Source of the DNA: Dimorphilus gyrociliatus
Taxonomy: Eukaryota; Animalia; Annelida
Length of the DNA stretch: 64,000 bases
Reading direction: 5' to 3'
Assembly: GCA_904063045.1 (NCBI GenBank)
Contig: CAJFCJ010000005.1
Span: 3,156,165-3,220,164 of the forward strand
Shown here: positions 34,401 through 48,687 of the stretch, piece after piece
How positions within the stretch are numbered: position 1 is the first letter of the stretch
Layout: the number at the start of each line of letters is the position of its first letter
Program-made: the position numbers and the translations under genes
Notes under the pieces: generated by a model
Told to the model about the DNA's origin: nothing
The model's input: the letters and a program-made list of their open reading frames with translations, nothing else
The model's database searches: none

Positions 34401-37400
34401 ATAATGTAAATATTACTTTAAAGATATTCAATCAAATTCTTATCTTAATAACAAATATTATCATTTATTTAACAGCAACAAAACGATTGGAGAATGGAAA
34501 TTATACGTAAAATCTACGAAATTATTATAGCGGAGAAGAGAATTCTTCGAAAGGAATTATTGGCTTTTAGCCGCCCTACTCAATTAATCGAATTAGAACG
34601 ACGATTAAATAACACAATAACCGACCATAATAAAGTAATAAATGACTTAAAATCGACTGATAGAAAATCTTTATTAGACGAAATCGACGCAATACAATTA
34701 AAATTAACTGATTACGAAGAAAAAGAAAAGGACGAGATGACCAGAGAAATCTCTCAATTAAGGCGGCAATGTAAGCTATTTCCTATCCCGAGTTTATCTT
34801 CTTTAATTCTGTTTCCCTTTATATAAAAACTATATAGTGAAGTTGACCGAATATAAAGCTGACCAAGAAAAAGTTCAAACTGAAGACATTCGATTAACAT
34901 TGGCTGAAGAAAAATCAAAAAATAGAGATATAAGTGTTCAATTCTTTGCCGCCCAAAGCGAATTGACTGACCTAAAGTCGCAATATAACAACTGTAAGAA
35001 CGAGTTAATGAGAATTAGAGATACCTTGGAACTTGAAGAAGGAAAAGTAGTAACCGCAACGTAAGTACGATCAATACATTGTATTATACTTAATAGAAAA
35101 CTAAGAAAAGAAAGAGAGAGAGTGGGGCAGATGGTGATATCGCCTCGTTGTGAGGTTTAAATACTAGGCACTGCAATAAAAATGGCAATAAAGTAGAGAA
35201 TATATCAATCTAAATAGCTCTTTTTAGCAATCTTTTACGTAATTATTAATTTTGTTGCTTATACACTTTGAGACATATATTCTGTTTTATAACCTATTAG
35301 ATCTATCTTGGAACAATTATTGTAAGTTATTTCTATATGCATGATACCGAGAATGGAATATTCACGATGTTGTTTACGTCATCCTTTACAGTTGATACTT
35401 TCATTTATATTTACCCTAATGAAAATTCTTCTTGGTATCCAACATTTATGTTGTTAACCTTTTGTATTGAATATTTCAATGGATTTTAAAGACATATATT
35501 AATGTGATCCCGCTTCATTTAATAACCTTGTTTATTTTAACAGAAATTCTTTAGAAAGAGAAAGAAATCATGTAAGAGAATTGGAAACATTACTCCAAAC
35601 AGAAAAAGATAATGTCGATAAATTTAGCCTGGAGTTGAACGAGGAGAAAGAGAACTCTAAACGGGAAACTGAACGTTTACTTGCCAATTTTGAGTCTTTG
35701 CAGAAGGAAATCGAGAATGAAAAAATGGAACGAAAAGATACAGAGAATAGATTATATAAGGAAAAGAATCAAGTAGAATTATTGAAGAGAGATTTGGAAA
35801 ATGAAAAAGACCAATTAAGAGCCCTTCATAATAGATATAGCTCTCAATTAAACGATTCTAAAAAGAATATAGAAGATTTAAGAAGAGCTTTGGAAGAATG
35901 TCAAGGCACTTTAAACAAAGAGAGAAGTTTGACAATACAATATAAAGAATCTTTAGCAGAGGAGAGATCTACCAGAAGAAGGTTATCAGACAGAGAAACA
36001 ATTGTTTCAGAAGAATTGAAAACATCTCTGGAATTGCAAAAAGCAAAGGTAATTGGAAAGAAAATGTCAACCTTGCAGCTCATTTTTAATTATTATTCAA
36101 TGAATTTTTTTCCCTCATAATTTTAGGTTGAGAAGCTTGAAAGGGAAAATAACAACCTTAGAGATAGTCAAAGTCGTCAGCAAGAACTTATTAGCAAGTT
36201 GAAGTTTACCCAAGATGAACTTCGTAGGCGTCCACCGACGATAGAAATCGAAAAACTGCGACACAGAATAATTGAATTAGAAGCCCAGTCGCCAGCTGCT
36301 TACAAAAAGCGCTTAAGTACGACTAAGGAACAAATTAGAACGCTTTTAAATAGGAGCGAGGTCTCGCCCGATCCTAATATTAAGAATATGGCTCAAGATC
36401 TTATGGATGTACTGCAAGATTTGCAGAAGATTGAAGCAGATGTCCACGATCTGGGAAGCATAGATGATACAGTTGATTCGTCTCTTATTGAAGTTAATGA
36501 AGCCACAGCAAGATTGATAAGAGAATTAAAAGAGGAGGTAAAAAGCATGAAGATCACGGTTAGAGACTTATATTTTTTCAATGCTTTTACTGCAAATTGT
36601 TAATTAATTTTGTGTTTAAATAAAAACTACAGGTAAAAGATAAGGATGAAGAATTGCATAGGTTTAAGAAAAGGTACCGTAGCCAATTGACAGACACTGA
36701 AAGGTCGAAGTTAGAGAATGAAATAGTTATGTTGAGACGAGAATTACATATCGTAAAAAAACAGTTACATCATTGTGAACATCAAATGGAAAAGCAAAAG
36801 AAGAGTGACCCAGTAGTCTTTCGCCGGAAAATACGTGATGTTCATTTTAAGTATCTCAAAGCTGAGAGTTTAAGAAAATCGTTGGTTTATCAAAAAAAGT
36901 ATTTATTATTAATGTTGGGTGGTTATCAAGAAACTGAAGAAGAAACCCTACGCATTTTGGCTACTATGGGAGGGAGACCTGATAAAAAAACTTTAGTTTC
37001 AAAGCAAATTTCGCCTCGACACAGATTTAAGAGTATTGTTTGTGCTGTGTGTGCCATTTGGCGGCTAAAATTTTATGTTCGTCATTGGAAGAAGACAACA
37101 AGGAACGAGGGACAAGCTTTAAGTAGTGCCAATAATGGATATATACCAGTTAGTAATAGATAGTAAGTGTTGTAGATGGATTTTCTTTTTTTTTCCAGTT
37201 TAATTTCATATTCTCTTTTTTTAATGAAACTTCTTTATACATGCTTCTATATGTAGTCTTTTATGTGAAAAGATATTTTTTTATGAATATTAATCAATGA
37301 AGAAATATGAATTTTTATCTTGATTAAAAAAGAAAAAAACAAGCAAAACAAAATCGAGACAATACTTAATTTTCTCTCTTTAAAAAGAAATATAAAATAA

Positions 37401-38234: not shown

Positions 38235-41227
38235 TTATTTTTTAGCTAAACGTTGTTTCAATTCAGTATTTTCCTTCTTCATTTCGGCGTAATCTTTAGC
38301 TATTTTTTCTAAATTTTCTTCAATTTTTTCTTGACTTTTACTCTCAATTTGATCTTCTAAAGTTCGAATCTCTCTTATAATAGCACCGGTTTCTTCTAGA
38401 GTTTTAATAATAATCTTGCAATTCTATTTACAAGAAAAAAAAGGAAAGAAATATATTTAGCAAGACACAGCGGTAGAATATATGCTACGTGCTTTCCACT
38501 GCATATATCCCAGATATGTAATTGCTAACCTCGTGCAATGCGGCTAAGTGCTTGTAAGATTTCCTAGAAGTTTCATCTTTTTTAGCATCCTAATAATTGA
38601 ATATGAAAAAATGTTGAGGATATAAAAAATTCTGACAGGCTTTAACGAGTATAAATTTACCCTGAATAATAACTCATCAGTAACGGTGAATGTCCTATCG
38701 AGCTTGCCTCCAATACTATTGACCTCTTTCTGAACTTCTTTAGTATCAATAAGAACCTATGCATAACGAATAGACTAATTAATAAATATATATTTATCAG
38801 GCTTACGATTCAAATGAGATTTCCTTACTTGATCTATGCCAGATTTTTGCTTTTTAATATTAGCAACAATCTCTAATATTCTCCTCGTGTATGCAGACCG
38901 ACTAACACTTTTTGTTAATTTCTCAACCTCATCACGCTTTACGAGCAAATATTTGCAGATAATAATTAATAAGTAAAAATTTTGTTTTTTTTGTATTTAC
39001 CAGTTGTTTTTGAGCTTCCTCCTTTATTTTATATTCACTAGTGACATCTTTAAAGTCTTGTTTAACTTTCTTCAACTCTTCAATTTTCTTTTCAGTTAAA
39101 GACTATAAAAGAAAGAATAGGGTAACAAACTTGTAAAGAGAAAAAAAAAGAGATGAAATACGATAATACAACAACAGTCTTTTTTCCCTTTATACGTTTA
39201 TAATAACATATACAGTATAAACAAAATATAGATAAAAACTTGTATAAATATAATTTATACCAACATCATTAAATCATTACTTACAGTAGTTTTATCTGCG
39301 GTTTCCTGTAATTTAGCTAACCTCTCTTCCAGAGGTTTCCTCCTTAATTCCCATTCTTTCTCAAATTCATCAATTTTCTCTTGCGTAGTCTTTACTTTTT
39401 TCTAACAGCGTGTATTAATATTAATAATATATAAGGTAGATTAGCCACTTGACTAGGGTAAAATCATATGAAATCCACATTAAATATTACCTCTAATAGT
39501 ATAGTATTATCTGATGCATTAGGCAATAAGTCGATTATTTTCTTTTTAATGTTATATTCTTCTTCTCTCTTCCTATTATCATCATCTAATCTATTCGACT
39601 TCTTCTTTAGCTTTAAATAAATCATATTAAATTATTATTTTTATCATTATTACTTTATATAGCTTTTACCTTAGGTAAAACTCCGTTATATTTGCTACAT
39701 TTCAATTCTAATTTCTCCATTTGTTTAGATATATCTAATAACTCACTACGTAAATTATCTAATTCTTCTTCTTTACTTATCGAACTCTTTACTTCTTTTC
39801 CTTCTTCTAATTGTTCAGCACTTTTAGGTGAATCCTATATCAATAATAAACATATCTACTTATTTAAATAAATAATATATAATTGTTTTAGAATCTATTA
39901 CATCATTAACATTTTCCTCATTTGAATGAAACAGTGTTGTCGTGTTTGAAATATTAATTGAACGATAATTCATCCAATCTCCATTTTGCATAGACTTTGA
40001 TTTGGCTTCTAAAATCGACTTTTTAACAATATTACCTAGAGCATCCTGACTCTTTTGCTGTAAGGATTATTTAAATATATGTACATAAATTTTTCTTTAA
40101 AAGTCATATATTGTAGGTTTACGTGTTTCGTTCTGATTGATTTCGATAATGAAAGCTCTTTTTCCTGTTGCTCAACTAATAAAGATGAATTAAGCTCCAT
40201 AAGCGAAGCTGGTAAATTTCTAACGTCCTTCAATTGTGAAGCAATAGGTTTCACGTCCGTCCCTTAAAATAGGAGGAATGTAATAAATTAAAAAGTTAAT
40301 TACGTAATGATCATAGATAAACAGTTGTTAAAAAAAAGCTTATAGTTATTACCATTCACTTCCGGAAGTGTCAAAGTCTCTGAGATGAATGGATGAGAAT
40401 GACTACTACCCTTTAGAGAGAAAAGTGGAAAATAGATAATTTCCTATTGATATTAAAAATTACAGAAATTATCTCGTCTATTATTACTTGTTTGTACCAT
40501 TTATCTCCTTTCCAGTAAATACCTCTTTTCTTTAGAAAACTCGGAATCCAAGGCAACTCTAACTGCTCTCGAATTTCTCTACCGATAGTGTGCTGCAACT
40601 GTTCATAGGCACCTGGAAATAATTAACTCTATACTATCCCATTTGATTCTCAACTGGTAATTTATTCTAATGTTTTTAATGTGTACTTAGTTTTCTATCG
40701 CTTGTTGTTGAACTTTCTTTCGGTAACCTTTCCACAAGGAACATAAAAACTTTCCTAATTTCAGTATCATTCGAATAAAGAAGTGTTTGATATCCTATTT
40801 CTCCTTTGTAACCGATACCCTGAAAATACCCATATTATTATTCAAAATACCATTATTATACTATAGTGTATAATTTGGCTACTTTTATTTCTTCAACTAA
40901 TTGAGTTCCGATGCGGAATTTGGTTGCCATATTAGGCGGAAGTTTCTTAGGCAAGTCATCTTTGCCTAGGATTATTTCTAAGCATTTAGCAACCCCTTCA
41001 ACTATAAGATCAACCGAAAACTCTGATAGGCTTTCTACGTGATCTTCAACGTCGCTGTTCAAAATAAGTAACATTTACTACAATTGCATATGAGAAAATT
41101 ATTTAATAGCTTTATTAATATGTTTTCGATCAGCTGTAAGCATAAAAATCGCGCCTTGTAAACAAACTAAGACATACCAGCCAATATTTTGTAGGGTATG
41201 TACTATTATTCTATCTACCTCCTCCAT
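38235..41227 (-). CDS. CCDC22: Coiled-coil domain-containing protein 22 (CCC/Commander complex)
   Basis: N-terminus MEEVDRIIVHTLQNIG, then LPPNMATKFRIG, IGYQTLLYSNDTEIRKVFMFLVERLPK and IREQLELPWIP. C-terminus NCKIIIKTLEETGAIIREIRTLEDQIE..NLEKIAKDYAEMKKEN..*. Confidence 0.93.
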
Positions 41228-41657
41228 ATTTTAGTCATGTGATCAACGGAATACTTGAAAACCAGTTTACAACAGCAACAATGTCAAGGCCGACATAGGC
41301 TTCTAAGAAATCCGTAATTTTTAGAAATTTCCATAAAGCCTATCATCATCTAAATTAGAGACTTTAGGATAGTACCTATACGAATAATGGTAGTTTCAAA
41401 AAGGCTACTGTAAAGAAGGGACTGAAAGGGACTTTCAGAGACTTTATTATATTATATATACAGTATATTATTTGAACTTTATTACATGAATAAATTCGAA
41501 TATAAAATCAATATTTAGTCTAAAAGAATAAATATGTAATAAAACTATTTAAGAAGTAGAATAAATTGTTATAAATTGATTAAGGAGACTTAAATGAAGG
41601 GTAAAAGATAGGAATATTGAAAAAATTTCATTTTCTCTTGCCATTTAATAAATCAAA

Positions 41658-43904
41658 TCATTTTCTCTTTTGAGAAATTAGGCACGTCTTCTTTCTCGGA
41701 CAGTAGCAACAAGCCCTTTAAAGGAAAGCTGATAAGATATGATATCGTATTGAATACAAACAAAAGTTTACCATGTTGGTACATGATTCTGGATGTACAT
41801 TCCAATTTGATGACCTATTTATAAAAAGTAGGTATGTAATAAACTAATAAGATATTTTCATAGATATATTAAATATAATTACCTTTATGACAACTTTCTA
41901 TGCATGGTTTACATATCCCTAGATGGAAATAGGAAGATGAAAAAAAATATATGAGAGCATATATCACCTATTTAATAACTTAGGTATAACTTGACACTTA
42001 CAATGAAAATTACATTGTTGACATGTAAAATAGTCCATAGACTCTGGGAATTCTTTGTCAAACGTTTGAGAAAAACAAACTTTTGGCTTGTCACTTAAGA
42101 GTTTTACCTCTCCGTATAATACTATTTTAGTACCAGGTTTCTGTTATTAATAACAATTTAATAGTTTTTATGTCAATTGAAAACAAATTCATACCAATCC
42201 ATACTGTAAAACTGGTTTAATTCCTGCAGGAATAACATGAAGACCGGCTACTTTCTTCTTTTCATTAATTACTAAATTAATCTGATCTTCAATATTTTTA
42301 AAATTTGAATCGGAAAATGGGCTATAAATAGATGCGATAAGTAAAATAAATATTGAAAATGACTGGGTGAATACCTTAATGAAAAGAATTTTGCAGTATC
42401 GGAAACTTCAATAATTGGATCATGCAACTTTTCCATTTCCTGATGAAGGATTCGTGTAAAGTCATTAATGCTGTAAAGAGCTTTCTATGATCATAATAAC
42501 TAATTGAAATTAATATTATTGATACCAACGTCGAATTTGGTTTTATAGTAATATCTTGTATGGAGATGTTTTTATGAAGAAGTATAAAAGTTACAGTAAT
42601 TGGTAGAACGGTAATATGCGGAATATGTTCGGATAGATATCTGGTAAGAAATAATCATATATACAGCAAAAACATAGAAATTAAGGTCCGTACATTTAAA
42701 ATTTATGAAATATAATATAGGTTTAATTGATAAAAATCTTTTCATTACCTGTCGTAAGCCTCCGATATCAGCCTAATAGACTCACTCTTTTCGAATTCAT
42801 ACCTATTTACTTGCGTTTCACGTTCCTCCTCAGTTTCGGTTGATAATGATCGCTTTCGCCTCTCGCATTCATCAATTATTAATTGACAGTATTTTTCATG
42901 GGCAGCCAAACCTTGACGTAAGTGTTCTTTAGAGATTGTTAAAAATTTTAATTAGTTATATAAGTGAATAATTCTGCTAAGATCATATTTTGAGACAAAC
43001 TTTTTAAAACCTCTTTAATTAGATTCTGACTATCTTTAACCTCTGAACCTGTATTTAAACATACATTTAATTATAAATTGTGTATATGTATATACATTTC
43101 CTATTTTTTATTCACCTAATTGACCCGCTTCGCTAATAATATTGTCTAGATAAGCTGCTTCTTCGTTTTTTTTCGCTTCCTGAATTGAGACTAGAATATT
43201 AAGAGAATTCTTACTAATAGGGATCAAATACCTAGAAATCAAATTTACTCACTAATTAATTCATTAAAACTTAAATCCCTAATTACGCTGTCAGGATTGA
43301 GAGACCCATTACAGCATGGACATTTCTGTCTCCTATCAATTGCTTCTATAATACATTTTCCACAAAATTTATGACCGCAAGTAGTGATGTGAACATCCTG
43401 TAGAATATTCATGCAGACTGGACATATGATATGATCTCCAAAGGTTGATAGCTATGTAACAATTATTTAATATAAAGCTTACACTATATGTTTTTTGTAT
43501 TTCATTTTATTTTAAGCCGAGTGATAATGAGTTAGTGGAAGGAAAAATATGGTTTTTTTAAATAAAAGTTAATCAATCGAGTTCTTACCGAAATTTTAAT
43601 ATTTAACTCTTCACTTTCCATTATATATTCTTGTTGGATAAATTCAACAAAATGATTTCAACAATAAAGACACAAATTGCTAAATTGTTAATCATAAACC
43701 TGAAAACAGAAAATACATTTCAGGAATCCTGTTCCTTTTTCAATTTTCTATATAAATATTAGTAAACGAATAGTTAACCAGTCACACACTATATATTTGT
43801 TAATAGGCGTATTTTGTTTCAATTTCATCACTTAAATAAAAGACAGATGACGGAGTTAGTTAGATTAAGATAAAAGGTAAGATTTACCTAAATCTTTCTT
43901 CCAT
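41658..43904 (-). CDS. Uncharacterised RING(C3HC4)-coiled coil-ubiquitin-like-UBR-box-like zinc finger protein (putative E3 ligase)
   Basis: About 11-12 in-phase exons. The RING exon is 43452-43253 (CPVCMNILQDVHITTCGHKFCGKCIIEAIDRRQKCPCC). The C-terminal region is CFSQTFDK..DYFTCQQCNFHWICKPCIESCHKGHQI..PTWACCYCPRKKTC, with stop TGA at 41660-41658. The start codon is uncertain: 43904 (MEERF) is phase-compatible, 43621 is not. Confidence 0.85.
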
Positions 43905-45737: not shown

Positions 45738-48687
45738 ATGACTGAAGAATGCAGCCGTAAAAAAGGAAGGATCGAAGATAAAGTCCAAGTAAGTAATAGC
45801 TTTAGCATTTTTTAATGACATGACATTAAAATTTGTTTCAGGAATTACTTCAGCAGTTAAAAAATTGTACCAAATCAAGTGACAACAACGAAAACAATTC
45901 CGAACAGTTGCGTTACTTTATTTACTTAAAATAAAAAATTAATACTATTTAATTATGCAATTTTCAGGAAATCTCTACTAGTATCAATGCTTAAGATTAC
46001 AGCACAAAAACAATTAGGAGATGTAAGTTTCATTTCAATAAATGTTGACTTTGCTTGTATAAAATTTTCATAATTCTTTCTAGACTCCAAAATCTATTCA
46101 AAAATTGCTCTCTCAATTAGTGAAAACTGAAGACTTGAATTGCTTGATTGTGAACCTGCACCCTGGAAATGAAGGATACTCTATTCAGTACCCAAAAGTG
46201 GAAGATGCCGAAACAATTATTTTATCTTATGAAGTAAGGGAGAAAGAAATATTAAATAATCGGCATTTATAGCAATTTGAAAATATAAATTAATGAACTT
46301 GTTCTTTCTTGTAGGAATCAGACTTTTTAGAATATTTAGATTCTCAACAAATCCCACCGTTTATCCTTGATGTTCTTGACGAAGCACCAGTCAATCTTTA
46401 CTACGACGGCCACGTTGTAGTGGAACTGCGCGATTTTAGGCGAAATACCGTTCCAAAGGAATACCATACATCCTATGTTATTTTAAAGCCTTCTCAGGAA
46501 ACTTTAATAGCAGATGTTAACATGATAGCTAATCAAATTAGTCCTAGCCATGCAATATCTCAGGAAGATATGCTAAGGTTGGAGCAGAAAATTATTGAGG
46601 ACATAGAAGAGCCTATGTGCCTGGATCCGTCACCAAGCCTGGCTGTTGTCCAAAATATCCTTGAAAAAGATGTACTAAATAGTGAAGGCCTTGTAAGACA
46701 AGCTAGGAAATGGAATCAGGCATCGGTTGCTAGGAGACGAAAATATCTTTCACAGTGTTCTGGTCCATGTTTCTCCTCCCTCCACGATTTCCTTATCACC
46801 AAACGACAGACGTCTGGGTAAATTTATTTTACTGATCAAATTAATGAATCTACCATGATTTATCATGTTTTCTATTTATTTCAGTGTTTCTTCCCATCGT
46901 AAATTGCTCTCTGTAGATACCTTCAAGGAACAACCAATTCGACTTTCAGCCCCATCTAATCTAGAAGTTATGAAATATGTGAACATGTCTTATGAAAGAT
47001 TTCGGAACGTTTCCTATCAAGTAATTGAAGAATGGTCATTTGAAAGGGAAGATAGCTCTTGTAATGTTTGGAACAAACTTATCGTTAGCAAAAAGGGAAA
47101 TGTTTTCGTTTGTCAGCTTTCTGAATATAGGTAAACTAAACGACAGCACTAAATGTTGATAAACGACAATTTAATGTTTTTCTTTTATTCCTGCTGTATA
47201 GGGCAAACGTAGAAAATTCTTTAAAGAGTAAAAAAATTGAATTTTCAACGAGAGAAGAATTAGATAATCATGTACAACAGTTTGAGAAAGTTTTTACTGA
47301 ATCTTATACAAAATCTGCCATTATTACACATACTATAGCTGGCCAAGCACCAAAAATTACCAAAATTGAGGGTAAAGATAATGGTAAGGTTAACGACACT
47401 GCCTTCTCAAGATTGTCTGAGGGAAAGATAACCTTTCAAAGTTCGTTATTTTTCCATATCATAGCTTTTATTATGAAAGGAGGGGCTTTTCTATTCTAAA
47501 AGTCGACTTTATTCGGCCGATGGCAATATAGTTAATGAGGCCTAAAAAATTTATCTTTCCTTGCTAATACTACTATTTTATCGTTTTAACATATTTCCCT
47601 TTTGATTTTACAGTGCCCAATAGCAATATTCAAAAAGCTGCAATAAATGCTCAATTCATCCAAAGTATTCAGCAGCAGCAGCAACAATTACAACAGCAAA
47701 AAATTCCTGCTAATACACCACAGTTACCGACTCATAGACTGAGACAAATGGGTATTTTTGCGCACGTATCAAGGTTGGCATACTTATCAATAATTGATAT
47801 AATACTAATAACGCCATATATTTCATTCAGTAGATCAGGTACTCCTCTACCTCAAGTAAACTTAACGACTTGCCGTAAGTTGCAGACAATGCAGTGTACG
47901 TTAACCCTTACTAATTAATTGTAACTATATATATATATATATATATATATACAGTATATATACCAATATATATGAATATTTATATGTATTAGTATATGAA
48001 ATATTCAATGTCATTCATATATTGCATTCTCTTATATAATTAATGGGTATTTCTTTGAATTATTTTCGTTTTTCAGCACTAATTTAATGATATATAGTGA
48101 GATTTATTAGACTTCAATTTCCATTAGCTCATCTACCATCCTATACCCAGGCAACAGCTTTTCCAGCCAACCGATCTCCCGTATCATCAGTTGGCATTGC
48201 CCAAACTATAACAGTATCTGCTTCGCAATTGACCTCCATCCCTCATGTACAAGGTACATATCTCTAATAGTTGTAATGCTTTATTCTTAACGTTCTTAGT
48301 AATATCAGTTCGTTCATCGAATCAAATTTCTCCTACGTCACCAACCACTTTACAAGTGAACTCTATTGATAAAAAAGATGGAACAAACCGAACTGGATTA
48401 GTTCATTTAGGTACACAACTTAATTTAATTAAGCCTGTTCGAGGCGGGACACCGAACAGTAGTGGTTTATCTCTTTTGCAATTAGTTTCGCCCCCCCAGT
48501 TGTCTCCAGCAGGTAAATTTCTAATCAATATATGATAGATTAAAAGCCACGTATATAATATTTGATTGTTACTAAATGTACTTTTTATTTATCCGTTTTA
48601 GACTCGTTAAGCCCCTCAAGTTCTACTACTCAACAGTTGTATATCACAACAGTGCAAACGGCCAATCCTAATACGTCGTCTATATAA
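45738..48687 (+). CDS. SUPT20H: SAGA complex subunit SPT20 homolog
   Basis: LNCLIVNLHPGNEGYSI, YEESDFLEYLDSQQIPPFILDVL, GHVVVELRDFR, VILKPSQETLIADV and LEQKII..EPMCLDPSP are Spt20-domain motifs. A Q/P/S-rich C-terminus follows, with TAA at 48685-48687. Confidence 0.92.

What the first reader, a model, noticed from the sequence alone, without database searches (positions are those of the whole stretch)
41658..43904. Unnamed E3-ligase candidate combining RING, ubiquitin-like and UBR-box-like zinc finger domains
Seen: about a dozen tiny exons, none shown in the ORF track, splice in phase into a protein of roughly 390 aa. It has an N-terminal C3HC4 RING, a charged coiled coil, a middle segment (LPITVTFILLHKNISIQDITIKPNSTINDF..PVLQYGLKPGTKIVLYG) and a terminal C-x-(F)xCxxC-x4-ICxxCxxxCHxGH-x-CxC-x5-C module. 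Established: that Cys/His spacing resembles the UBR box of N-recognins and FBXO11, which in UBR1/2 reads N-degrons, and RING domains recruit E2s. Inference: the middle segment has a ubiquitin beta-grasp pattern. A small stand-alone RING + UBL + UBR protein matches no named vertebrate gene I recognise, so it could be an uncharacterised single-chain N-degron-type ligase of invertebrates.
Basis: partly seen in the sequence, partly recalled or inferred. Interest (0 to 1): 0.75.

Follow-up and report, generated by a model that had tools for sequence, protein, structure and literature searches.

The report
Unnamed RING–UBL–UBR-box ubiquitin ligase family
This is a real, transcribed 12-exon gene for a small ubiquitin ligase that combines a RING finger, a ubiquitin-like domain and a UBR-box zinc finger; it belongs to an old, unnamed family found from amoebae to sea urchins but not seen in vertebrates, and it probably does not read classical N-degrons.

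Summary
A minus-strand gene (CDS 43621..41658) has 12 GT..AG exons. A 3110-nt transcript contig with no mismatches reproduces introns 2-11 exactly. The protein is 380 aa, not about 390, because the true intron 2 is 62 nt.

- **RING:** Pfam calls a C3HC4 RING in exon 2.
- **Family:** The RING exon led to more than 80 full-length relatives of 380-440 aa. All are "uncharacterized" or carry automatic misnomers. They occur in annelids, molluscs, a nemertean, echinoderms, hemichordates, sponges, a rotifer, a choanoflagellate, Amoebozoa (Dictyostelium DDB_G0270568), a ciliate, a rhizarian and stramenopiles including brown algae. No vertebrate, arthropod, nematode, fungal or plant member appeared.
- **UBR box:** A family profile of the C-terminal module hits the UBR boxes of FBXO11 (E 4.6e-6) and UBR4. 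An AlphaFold model matches only UBR4 (Z 9.0) and UBR5 (Z 8.2) among 48,161 chains.
- **UBL:** The middle domain folds as a ubiquitin-like beta-grasp (Z 9.8, TBCB/TBCE).
- **N-degron reading:** The Asp that anchors the N-degron amino group in UBR2 and UBR4 is Tyr here, and the loop is basic. A classical N-recognin role is therefore unlikely.

Verdict: a new architectural variant of UBR-box E3 ligases. The scan's notes hold no earlier finding of it.

The parts
43589..43700 (-). Exon 1: 5' UTR (about 79 nt) plus ATG at 43621, codons 1-11
   Evidence: The contig's first 112 nt precede exon 2. There is an in-frame stop upstream of the ATG. The N-terminus aligns with relatives.
43253..43451 (-). Exon 2 (aa 12-77), carrying the C3HC4 RING
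   Evidence: piece 43253-43451. Pfam zf-C3HC4_2 E 8e-11.
43311..43424 (-). RING finger, aa 21-58 (C21 C24 C36 H38 C41 C44 C55 C58)
   Evidence: nearest solved RINGs: RING2, COP1, RNF4, TRAF6. All ligands are invariant in the family.
43116..43190 (-). Exon 3
   Evidence: Joints 43190/43253 and 43048/43116.
43001..43048 (-). Exon 4
   Evidence: joints.
42749..42926 (-). Exon 5 (charged helical region)
   Evidence: piece 42749-42926.
42625..43295 (-). Charged helical / probable coiled-coil region, aa about 64-183 (exons 2-6). It contains the family motifs 'KHLxxxL' and 'AYDxYL'.
   Evidence: 38% charged residues. Conserved blocks in the alignment. It was not folded here.
42530..42640 (-). Exon 6
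   Evidence: joints 42640/42749 and 42470/42530.
42375..42470 (-). Exon 7
   Evidence: joints.
42195..42321 (-). Exon 8
   Evidence: piece 42195-42321.
42099..42618 (-). Ubiquitin-like (beta-grasp) domain, aa about 186-303 (exons 6-9)
   Evidence: AF2 model of relative P0012:224-420, pLDDT 93. VIA Z 9.8 to the TBCB UBL, 9.7 to the TBCE UBL, 8.7 to ubiquitin. Foldseek probability 1.0.
42002..42140 (-). Exon 9 (end of UBL, start of UBR box)
   Evidence: piece 42001-42140.
41883..41918 (-). Exon 10
   Evidence: joints.
41772..41814 (-). Exon 11
   Evidence: joints.
41658..41715 (-). Exon 12, with TGA at 41660-41658. The 3' end is not fixed.
   Evidence: The contig leaves this exon at 41682.
41673..42089 (-). 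UBR box, aa about 307-376 (exons 9-12): C311, C329, C332, C338, C341, C345, H346, H349, C364, C365, C367, C373
   Evidence: Local hmmsearch of the family Zn profile against the joined model, E 1.2e-33. Also.

Best explanation
The locus encodes an intact, expressed 380-aa member of an ancient, vertically inherited, so far unnamed eukaryotic family of single-chain RING ubiquitin ligases. The domain order is RING (C3HC4), a long charged helical region, a ubiquitin-like beta-grasp domain, and a UBR box of the UBR4/UBR5/FBXO11 subtype.

Most likely mechanism (inferred):
- The RING recruits a charged E2.
- The helical region probably forms a coiled coil that pairs two chains, as in TRIM, COP1 and TRAF ligases.
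- The UBL and UBR box are predicted to form one rigid unit, and this unit is the module that recognises the substrate or partner.

The acidic residues that hold a free basic N-terminus in UBR1, UBR2 and UBR4 are replaced by Tyr and Lys/Arg. The box therefore probably reads a different peptide feature than classical Arg/N-degrons.
For: - **Gene structure and transcription:**
- **RING:** (E 8e-11).
- **Family:** led to full-length relatives. Local phmmer of the joined model gave E 1e-93 to 1e-35. A profile search gave 91 proteins with E <= 1e-10, about 80 of them full-length members (the weakest rows match only the RING), and all are uncharacterised or misnamed.
- **Vertical descent:** the tree follows the species tree, with protists apart from holozoans and sponges outside the bilaterians. 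The mollusc, echinoderm and hemichordate clades have support of at least 96.
- **UBR box:**
- **UBL:**
- **Two-domain model:** pLDDT 93, pTM 0.79, and the linker blocks score 91-98.
- **Conservation:** all conserved residues are kept in the window protein.
- **Loss of the anchor Asp:**, read against PMC10687169.
Against: - No biochemical datum exists for any member.
- The folds were computed on a relative (P0012, 39% identical) and on family alignments, not on the window protein itself.
- The coiled coil and dimerisation were not modelled.
- The Asp-to-Tyr mapping rests on sequence alignment bridged through the one member that keeps C-D-C (Adineta). It does not rest on superposed coordinates.
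- Dictyostelium members lack the third Cys of CCYC, so the exact ligand register is uncertain.
Confidence: 0.72

Rival explanations
1. One reading: a compact classical N-recognin whose UBR box binds destabilising N-terminal residues (Arg/Lys/His or bulky hydrophobic) and whose RING ubiquitinates them.
For: The fold is closest to the UBR boxes of UBR4 and UBR5, both N-degron binders (PMC5606531 introduction). RING and UBR box sit on one chain, as in UBR1 and UBR2.
Against: The position of UBR2 Asp150 / UBR4 Asp1715, which binds the N-terminal amino group, is Tyr in 110 of 111 members that could be scored and in the window protein (Y366). The Asp153 position lies in a Lys/Arg run (PMC10687169). 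By sequence the box is nearest to FBXO11, which binds no N-degron (PMC5606531). UBR1 itself scores only E 1.2.
Confidence: 0.15
2. The UBL-UBR unit is not the substrate reader. Instead it is a regulatory or docking module: the UBL binds the proteasome or ubiquitin receptors, or folds back on the RING as in Parkin, and the UBR box is a structural zinc scaffold. Substrates would be chosen by the helical region or by partner proteins.
For: The UBL resembles the scaffold-type UBLs of TBCB, TBCE and the USP DUSP-UBL. FBXO11's UBR box has no known ligand pocket (PMC5606531). There are conserved motifs in the helical region.
Against: The Zn module is the best conserved part outside the RING (44% mean column identity). 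It has invariant surface-type aromatics (Y326, W336, Y366), which fits a binding site better than a pure scaffold.
Confidence: 0.1
3. Not one gene: a chance chain of ORF pieces, a pseudogene, or two adjacent genes (a RING gene and a zinc-finger gene).
For: No exon is long enough for an ORF track. The only transcript evidence is an assembled contig of unknown strandedness, and that contig also runs on into the next gene.
Against: One contig spans all exons with exact GT..AG joints and no mismatches. The frame is open throughout. More than 80 relatives share the same order and length. All conserved residues are kept.
Confidence: 0.02

Closest known systems
FBXO11 / UBR6 UBR box (PDB 7yrb, 5vmd)
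   Same: Nearest by sequence: profile E 4.6e-6 and 1.3e-5. It shares the 'D-[FY]-[FY]-x-C-x-x-C ... I-C-x-x-C-x-x-x-C-H-x-G-H' pattern and has a Cys rather than His as the last zinc ligand, the subfamily 2 feature of PMC10687169.
   Different: FBXO11 is an F-box substrate receptor with CASH/beta-helix repeats that works inside an SCF complex. It has no RING, coiled coil or UBL. It keeps the C-D-C motif, whereas this family has C-C-Y-C.
UBR4 and UBR5 UBR boxes (PDB 8j9q/8j9r, 8p82)
   Same: Nearest by fold: Z 9.0 with 68 of 73 residues at 2.5 A and 24% identity, and Z 8.2. All top Foldseek rows are these boxes.
   Different: They sit in giant proteins (about 5200 aa, and a HECT ligase). UBR4 uses Asp1715 and Phe1713/Phe1671 to bind N-degrons (PMC10687169). 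Here the Asp position is Tyr and the loop is 4 residues longer.
UBR1/UBR2 (and plant PRT6) N-recognins
   Same: A UBR box and a RING-type ligase domain on a single chain, which is the idea of a self-contained reader plus ligase.
   Different: They are about 200 kDa, with an N-terminal UBR box, a ClpS-like N-domain and an atypical RING. They are subfamily 1, with His at Zn2. The matches are weak: E 1.2 and Z 3.4 to PRT6. The acidic pocket residues are absent here.
RING-coiled-coil ligases (TRIM, COP1, TRAF6, RING1B)
   Same: An N-terminal C3HC4 RING followed by a long helical region and a C-terminal recognition module. The RING is closest to RING2, COP1, RNF4 and TRAF6. Databases auto-name relatives 'TRIM-like'.
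   Different: There is no B-box between RING and helices, and no PRY-SPRY, WD40, TRAF-C or RAWUL domain. The weak zf-B_box hits fall inside the UBR box.
UBL domains of tubulin cofactors TBCB/TBCE
   Same: Best structural match of the middle domain: Z 9.8 and 9.7, with 83-86 residues at 2.5 A.
   Different: There is no detectable sequence relation and the context is unrelated. The family UBL carries a helical insertion and packs on a zinc finger.

Membership tests
RING finger, C3HC4 (PF13923/PF00097) | Eight Cys/His zinc ligands in cross-brace spacing, scoring above the Pfam cut-off | tested here: met
   Exon 2 by reference: 42 bits against a cut-off of 27, E 8e-11. The ligands C21, C24, C36, H38, C41, C44, C55 and C58 are invariant in the family.
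UBR box (zf-UBR, PF02207) | Sequence-profile relation to known UBR boxes | tested here: met
   The family profile A2 hits FBXO11 at E 4.6e-6 and UBR4 at 5.8e-4. Pfam zf-UBR hits 6 of 26 relatives, best E 1.9e-6. The window protein fits A2 at E 1.2e-33 in a local script. The box is split over exons 9-12, so the window exons could not be tested singly.
UBR box (zf-UBR, PF02207) | The UBR-box fold of about 70 residues | tested here: met
   AF2 model of relative P0012:340-420 (pLDDT 88). Only UBR4 (Z 9.0) and UBR5 (Z 8.2) exceed Z 5 among 48,161 chains. The test was on a relative, not on the window protein.
UBR box (zf-UBR, PF02207) | Eleven Cys/His ligands for three zinc ions; subfamily 2 has Cys as the last ligand (PMC10687169) | tested here: met
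   There are 10 conserved Cys and 2 invariant His, and the last one is a Cys (C373). Actual zinc binding cannot be tested here.
N-recognins (UBR1/2/4/5 type N-degron readers) | Asp that hydrogen-bonds the free N-terminal amino group (UBR2 D150, UBR4 D1715) | tested here: not met
   It aligns with Tyr (window Y366) in 110 of 111 scorable members. Only Adineta has Asp. The register rests on sequence, not on coordinates.
N-recognins (UBR1/2/4/5 type N-degron readers) | Second Asp that selects Arg (UBR1/2 D153) | tested here: not met
   The corresponding stretch is P-[KR]-K-K (window P368-R369-K370-K371). The C-terminal 25 residues hold 6 Lys/Arg and no Asp/Glu.
N-recognins (UBR1/2/4/5 type N-degron readers) | Measured binding of peptides with destabilising N-termini | not testable with these tools
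   This needs ITC, NMR or peptide arrays.
Ubiquitin-like (beta-grasp) domains | The beta-grasp fold | tested here: met
   Z 9.8 to TBCB, 9.7 to TBCE, 8.8 to ISG15 and 8.7 to ubiquitin, covering whole target domains. Foldseek probability is 1.0. There is no Pfam or PDB sequence hit apart from one weak UBL_UBAC1 hit.
TRIM (RING-B-box-coiled-coil) | A B-box zinc finger between RING and coiled coil | tested here: not met
   There are no Cys/His clusters between aa 59 and 310. Pfam finds no B-box there in 10 full-length relatives.
PRC1 RING1/PCGF (RING + RAWUL) | A C-terminal RAWUL ubiquitin-like domain | tested here: inconclusive
   The RING is nearest to RING2. However, there is no RAWUL Pfam hit and no RAWUL structure among the 50 best fold matches. 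PRC1 proteins have no UBR box.

The most novel reading that the evidence does not exclude
The family could be an eighth, ancestral type of UBR-box ligase: a compact self-contained terminus reader with a new specificity. A Tyr/Trp-lined, basic pocket might read acidic, modified or otherwise non-classical protein ends or short internal motifs. It would have been lost from vertebrates, insects, nematodes, fungi and plants, but kept in Dictyostelium, where it could be tested genetically.
Probability: 0.2. Interest if true: 0.8.

Novelty: new variant of a known kind. Interest (0 to 1): 0.55.

Why it matters
UBR-box ligases are normally described as seven mammalian types. This family shows another, much smaller architecture, RING-helices-UBL-UBR box. 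It is old, going back to a common ancestor of animals, Amoebozoa and stramenopile/alveolate/rhizarian protists, and it has been conserved as a single-copy gene. It has escaped study because the usual model animals, yeast and plants appear to lack it, and because databases label it only as a RING or "TRIM-like" protein.

At about 400 aa, with a confident two-domain model, it is an easy system for asking what a UBR box of the UBR4/5/6 subtype binds when the classical acidic pocket is gone. Dictyostelium DDB_G0270568 offers a genetic handle.

Tried and rejected
1. My first splice model had a 17-nt intron 2 and gave 396 aa. It was rejected by the transcript joints and replaced by the 62-nt intron.
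2. Pfam on single exons found only the RING. The UBL and UBR box are split by introns, so this says nothing about them.
3. The protein-atlas look-up of exon 9 gave RecG-wedge noise, and the PDB sequence search with exon 9 gave nothing. Both were discarded.
4. Pfam on 10 full-length relatives at E <= 0.1 showed only the RING. Scanning the C-terminal halves at relaxed E recovered zf-UBR in 6 of 26.
5. I first read the contig's junction into the neighbouring gene as an in-frame fusion with CCDC22. Recomputation showed a stop two codons after the junction, so that reading was rejected.
6. TRIM and PRC1 membership were considered and not accepted (see the membership test).
7. Literature searches for the architecture, for DDB_G0270568 and for UBR boxes in Dictyostelium found no description of the family.
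Exons were searched by reference. The joined model was built only inside scripts from window coordinates, for local comparison with proteins the tools had fetched. Folds were run on relative P0012 and on family alignments.

Full report
**What is there.** The finding lies on the minus strand. Three-frame translation and splice-site reading gave a chain of 12 short exons with GT..AG introns. The only public run that holds the stretch (X1) turned out to be a set of spliced contigs. One 3110-nt contig lies on the locus with no differing letters, and its joints reproduce introns 2-11 to the base, all CT..AC on the plus strand, which is GT..AG for a minus-strand gene.

Intron 2 is 43252..43191 (62 nt), not a 17-nt gap, so the protein is 380 aa. 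The contig starts near 43700, the first in-frame ATG is at 43621, and there is no transcript depth between 43707 and 43873. Intron 1 is the one joint the table left out. It follows from the record coordinates of exon 2.

**Family.** Exon 2 is a C3HC4 RING (Pfam E 8e-11). Its nearest solved relatives are the RINGs of RING2, COP1, RNF4 and TRAF6. A phmmer search with this exon against 1.84 billion representatives returned many proteins of 380-440 aa with the RING at the N-terminus. Local phmmer of the joined model against them gave E 1e-93 to 1e-35 over the full length, at 24-39% identity.

A profile of 26 members then found 91 proteins with E <= 1e-10. About 80 of these are full-length members. 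The weakest dozen or so rows, including every vertebrate hit, match only the RING. Every member with a name is 'uncharacterized', 'hypothetical' or 'RING-type domain-containing', or carries an automatic misnomer such as TRIM39-like, PCGF6-like or LONRF3.

The taxa are:
- Annelids: Owenia, Lamellibrachia, Paralvinella.
- A nemertean, and many molluscs.
- All echinoderm classes sampled, and three hemichordates.
- Five sponges.
- The rotifer Adineta.
- The choanoflagellate Salpingoeca punica.
- Amoebozoa: Dictyostelium DDB_G0270568, Pelomyxa, Balamuthia, Luapelamoeba.
- Stentor, Paulinella, Platysulcus and brown algae.

No vertebrate, arthropod, nematode, cnidarian, fungal or plant member appeared. 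Because the word-indexed searches are not exhaustive, this is weak evidence of absence.

A quick maximum-likelihood tree follows the species tree. Protists separate from holozoans (support 98), sponges fall outside the bilaterians, and molluscs, echinoderms and hemichordates each form a clade (support 96-99). The window protein sits on a long branch inside the bilaterians. This looks like a single-copy gene inherited vertically. Other agents' notes name the genome as probably Dimorphilus gyrociliatus. I did not verify that.

**C-terminal module.** In the family alignment the module reads C-[FY]...D-Y-[FY]-x-C-x-x-C-x-x-N-W-I-C-x-x-C-x-x-x-C-H-x-x-H...H-x-P-T-W-A-C-C-Y-C-x-K-K-x-K-C, with 11 invariant and 5 nearly invariant positions. 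Four lines of evidence identify it as a UBR box:
- A profile of it hits the UBR boxes of FBXO11 (E 4.6e-6 and 1.3e-5) and UBR4 (E 5.8e-4) in the PDB, and UBR1 only at E 1.2.
- Pfam zf-UBR matches 6 of 26 members, best E 1.9e-6.
- An AlphaFold model of the module (pLDDT 88) was aligned to 48,161 representative chains. Only UBR4 (Z 9.0, 68 of 73 residues at 2.5 A, 24% identity) and UBR5 (Z 8.2) scored above 5. Plant PRT6 scored 3.4 and B-boxes scored below 3.
- The 14 best Foldseek rows are all UBR5, UBR4 or UBR6.

The last ligand is a Cys. PMC10687169 gives this as the mark of the UBR4-7 subfamily.

**Middle domain.** A model of the whole C-terminal half (pLDDT 93, pTM 0.79) shows a beta-grasp domain followed directly by the zinc module. 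Confidence in the linker is high, which suggests one rigid unit. The beta-grasp part matches the UBLs of TBCB (Z 9.8, 86 of 86 residues) and TBCE (Z 9.7), kindlin F0, ISG15 and ubiquitin (Z 8.7). Foldseek and the ESM Atlas agree. There is no sequence-level relation to a known UBL.

**Does it read N-degrons?** According to PMC10687169, the free amino group of the substrate is held by Asp150 of UBR2, which equals Asp1715 of UBR4 in the motif F-C-D-C. Asp153 gives UBR1 and UBR2 their preference for Arg.

The one family member that keeps C-D-C (Adineta) aligns its C-D-C with UBR4 C1714-D1715-C1716. The residue numbers derived from that alignment agree with those in the paper. In the family alignment the same column is Tyr. 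Tyr occupies it in 110 of 111 scorable proteins and in the window protein, as Y366.

The following residues are Pro-Arg/Lys-Lys-Lys. The last 25 residues of the window protein hold six Lys/Arg and no acidic residue. FBXO11, the closest relative by sequence, binds no N-degron and lacks a pocket (PMC5606531). The classical N-recognin reading is therefore not supported.

Two cautions apply. The register rests on sequence, because model coordinates cannot be read. Dictyostelium members have C-C-Y-D, so the ligand assignment in this loop is not settled.

**Most likely mechanism.** What is shown: an intact RING with all ligands, a conserved charged helical region of about 120 residues, and a conserved UBL-UBR unit. 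What is inferred: the RING recruits an E2, the helices pair two chains as in TRIM, COP1 or TRAF ligases, and the UBL-UBR unit selects the substrate or partner through a non-classical site lined by invariant aromatics (Y326, W336, Y366) and basic residues. I put this at about 0.7. I put the classical N-recognin at about 0.15, a purely regulatory or docking role for the UBL-UBR unit at about 0.1, and an artefact at about 0.02.

**Comparison and novelty.** It works like a single-chain RING E3 with a C-terminal recognition domain. It is a member of the RING and UBR-box superfamilies. It is not a TRIM (no B-box), not a PRC1 RING protein (no RAWUL detected), and not demonstrably an N-recognin (the key Asp is not met).

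I found no paper that describes this architecture or any member. Database entries carry only the RING annotation. I rate it a new variant of a known kind. It is of moderate interest and is readily testable in Dictyostelium.

**Unexplained.** The same contig leaves the last exon at 41682 and continues at 41067 in the neighbouring CCDC22 gene. The skipped 614 nt start with GT and end with AG on the plus strand, which is the wrong strand for both genes. In that form the protein would end ...RKKTCLF instead of ...RKKTCLISQKRK. The simplest reading is an assembly path through a spliced antisense RNA, but I could not test it.

Noticed in passing
window 41067-41682: The transcript contig joins 41682 directly to 41067, skipping 614 nt whose ends are GT..AG on the plus strand, while both flanking genes are on the minus strand. 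It cuts the RING gene's last exon (the protein would end ...TCLF*). It enters the CCDC22 gene 13 nt upstream of the expected exon-2 acceptor and skips CCDC22 exon 1. It may be a spliced antisense RNA captured by the assembler.
   Followed up: partly
window about 40200-41227, minus strand: The downstream neighbour is a CCDC22 (Commander complex) gene. Exon 1 'MEEVDRIIVHTLQNIG' starts at 41227. The next exon matches Pfam CCDC22_N at E 8e-12. Four further short introns are confirmed by the same contig.
   Followed up: partly
window 35581-37163, plus strand: Long coiled-coil ORFs end in a PACT domain (pericentrin/AKAP450 centrosome-targeting domain, Pfam E 5.9e-22). This is probably the 3' end of a pericentrin-like gene.
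   Followed up: partly
window 46420-46821, plus strand: An ORF with an Spt20 SEP domain (Pfam E 1e-7), probably an exon of a SAGA-complex SPT20 homologue.
   Followed up: no
family members P0116 and P0160-P0165 (Dictyostelium), and P0088 (Adineta): Dictyostelium members have C-C-Y-D-E plus a terminal C-C instead of C-C-Y-C ... C. The rotifer member alone has the canonical K-C-D-C of classical UBR boxes. The zinc-ligand set of this loop therefore varies within the family.
   Followed up: partly
window protein versus the 15-billion protein collection: No protein more than about 40% identical to the full window protein was returned. The worm's own gene product therefore seems to be missing from the collection and may be unannotated.
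   Followed up: no
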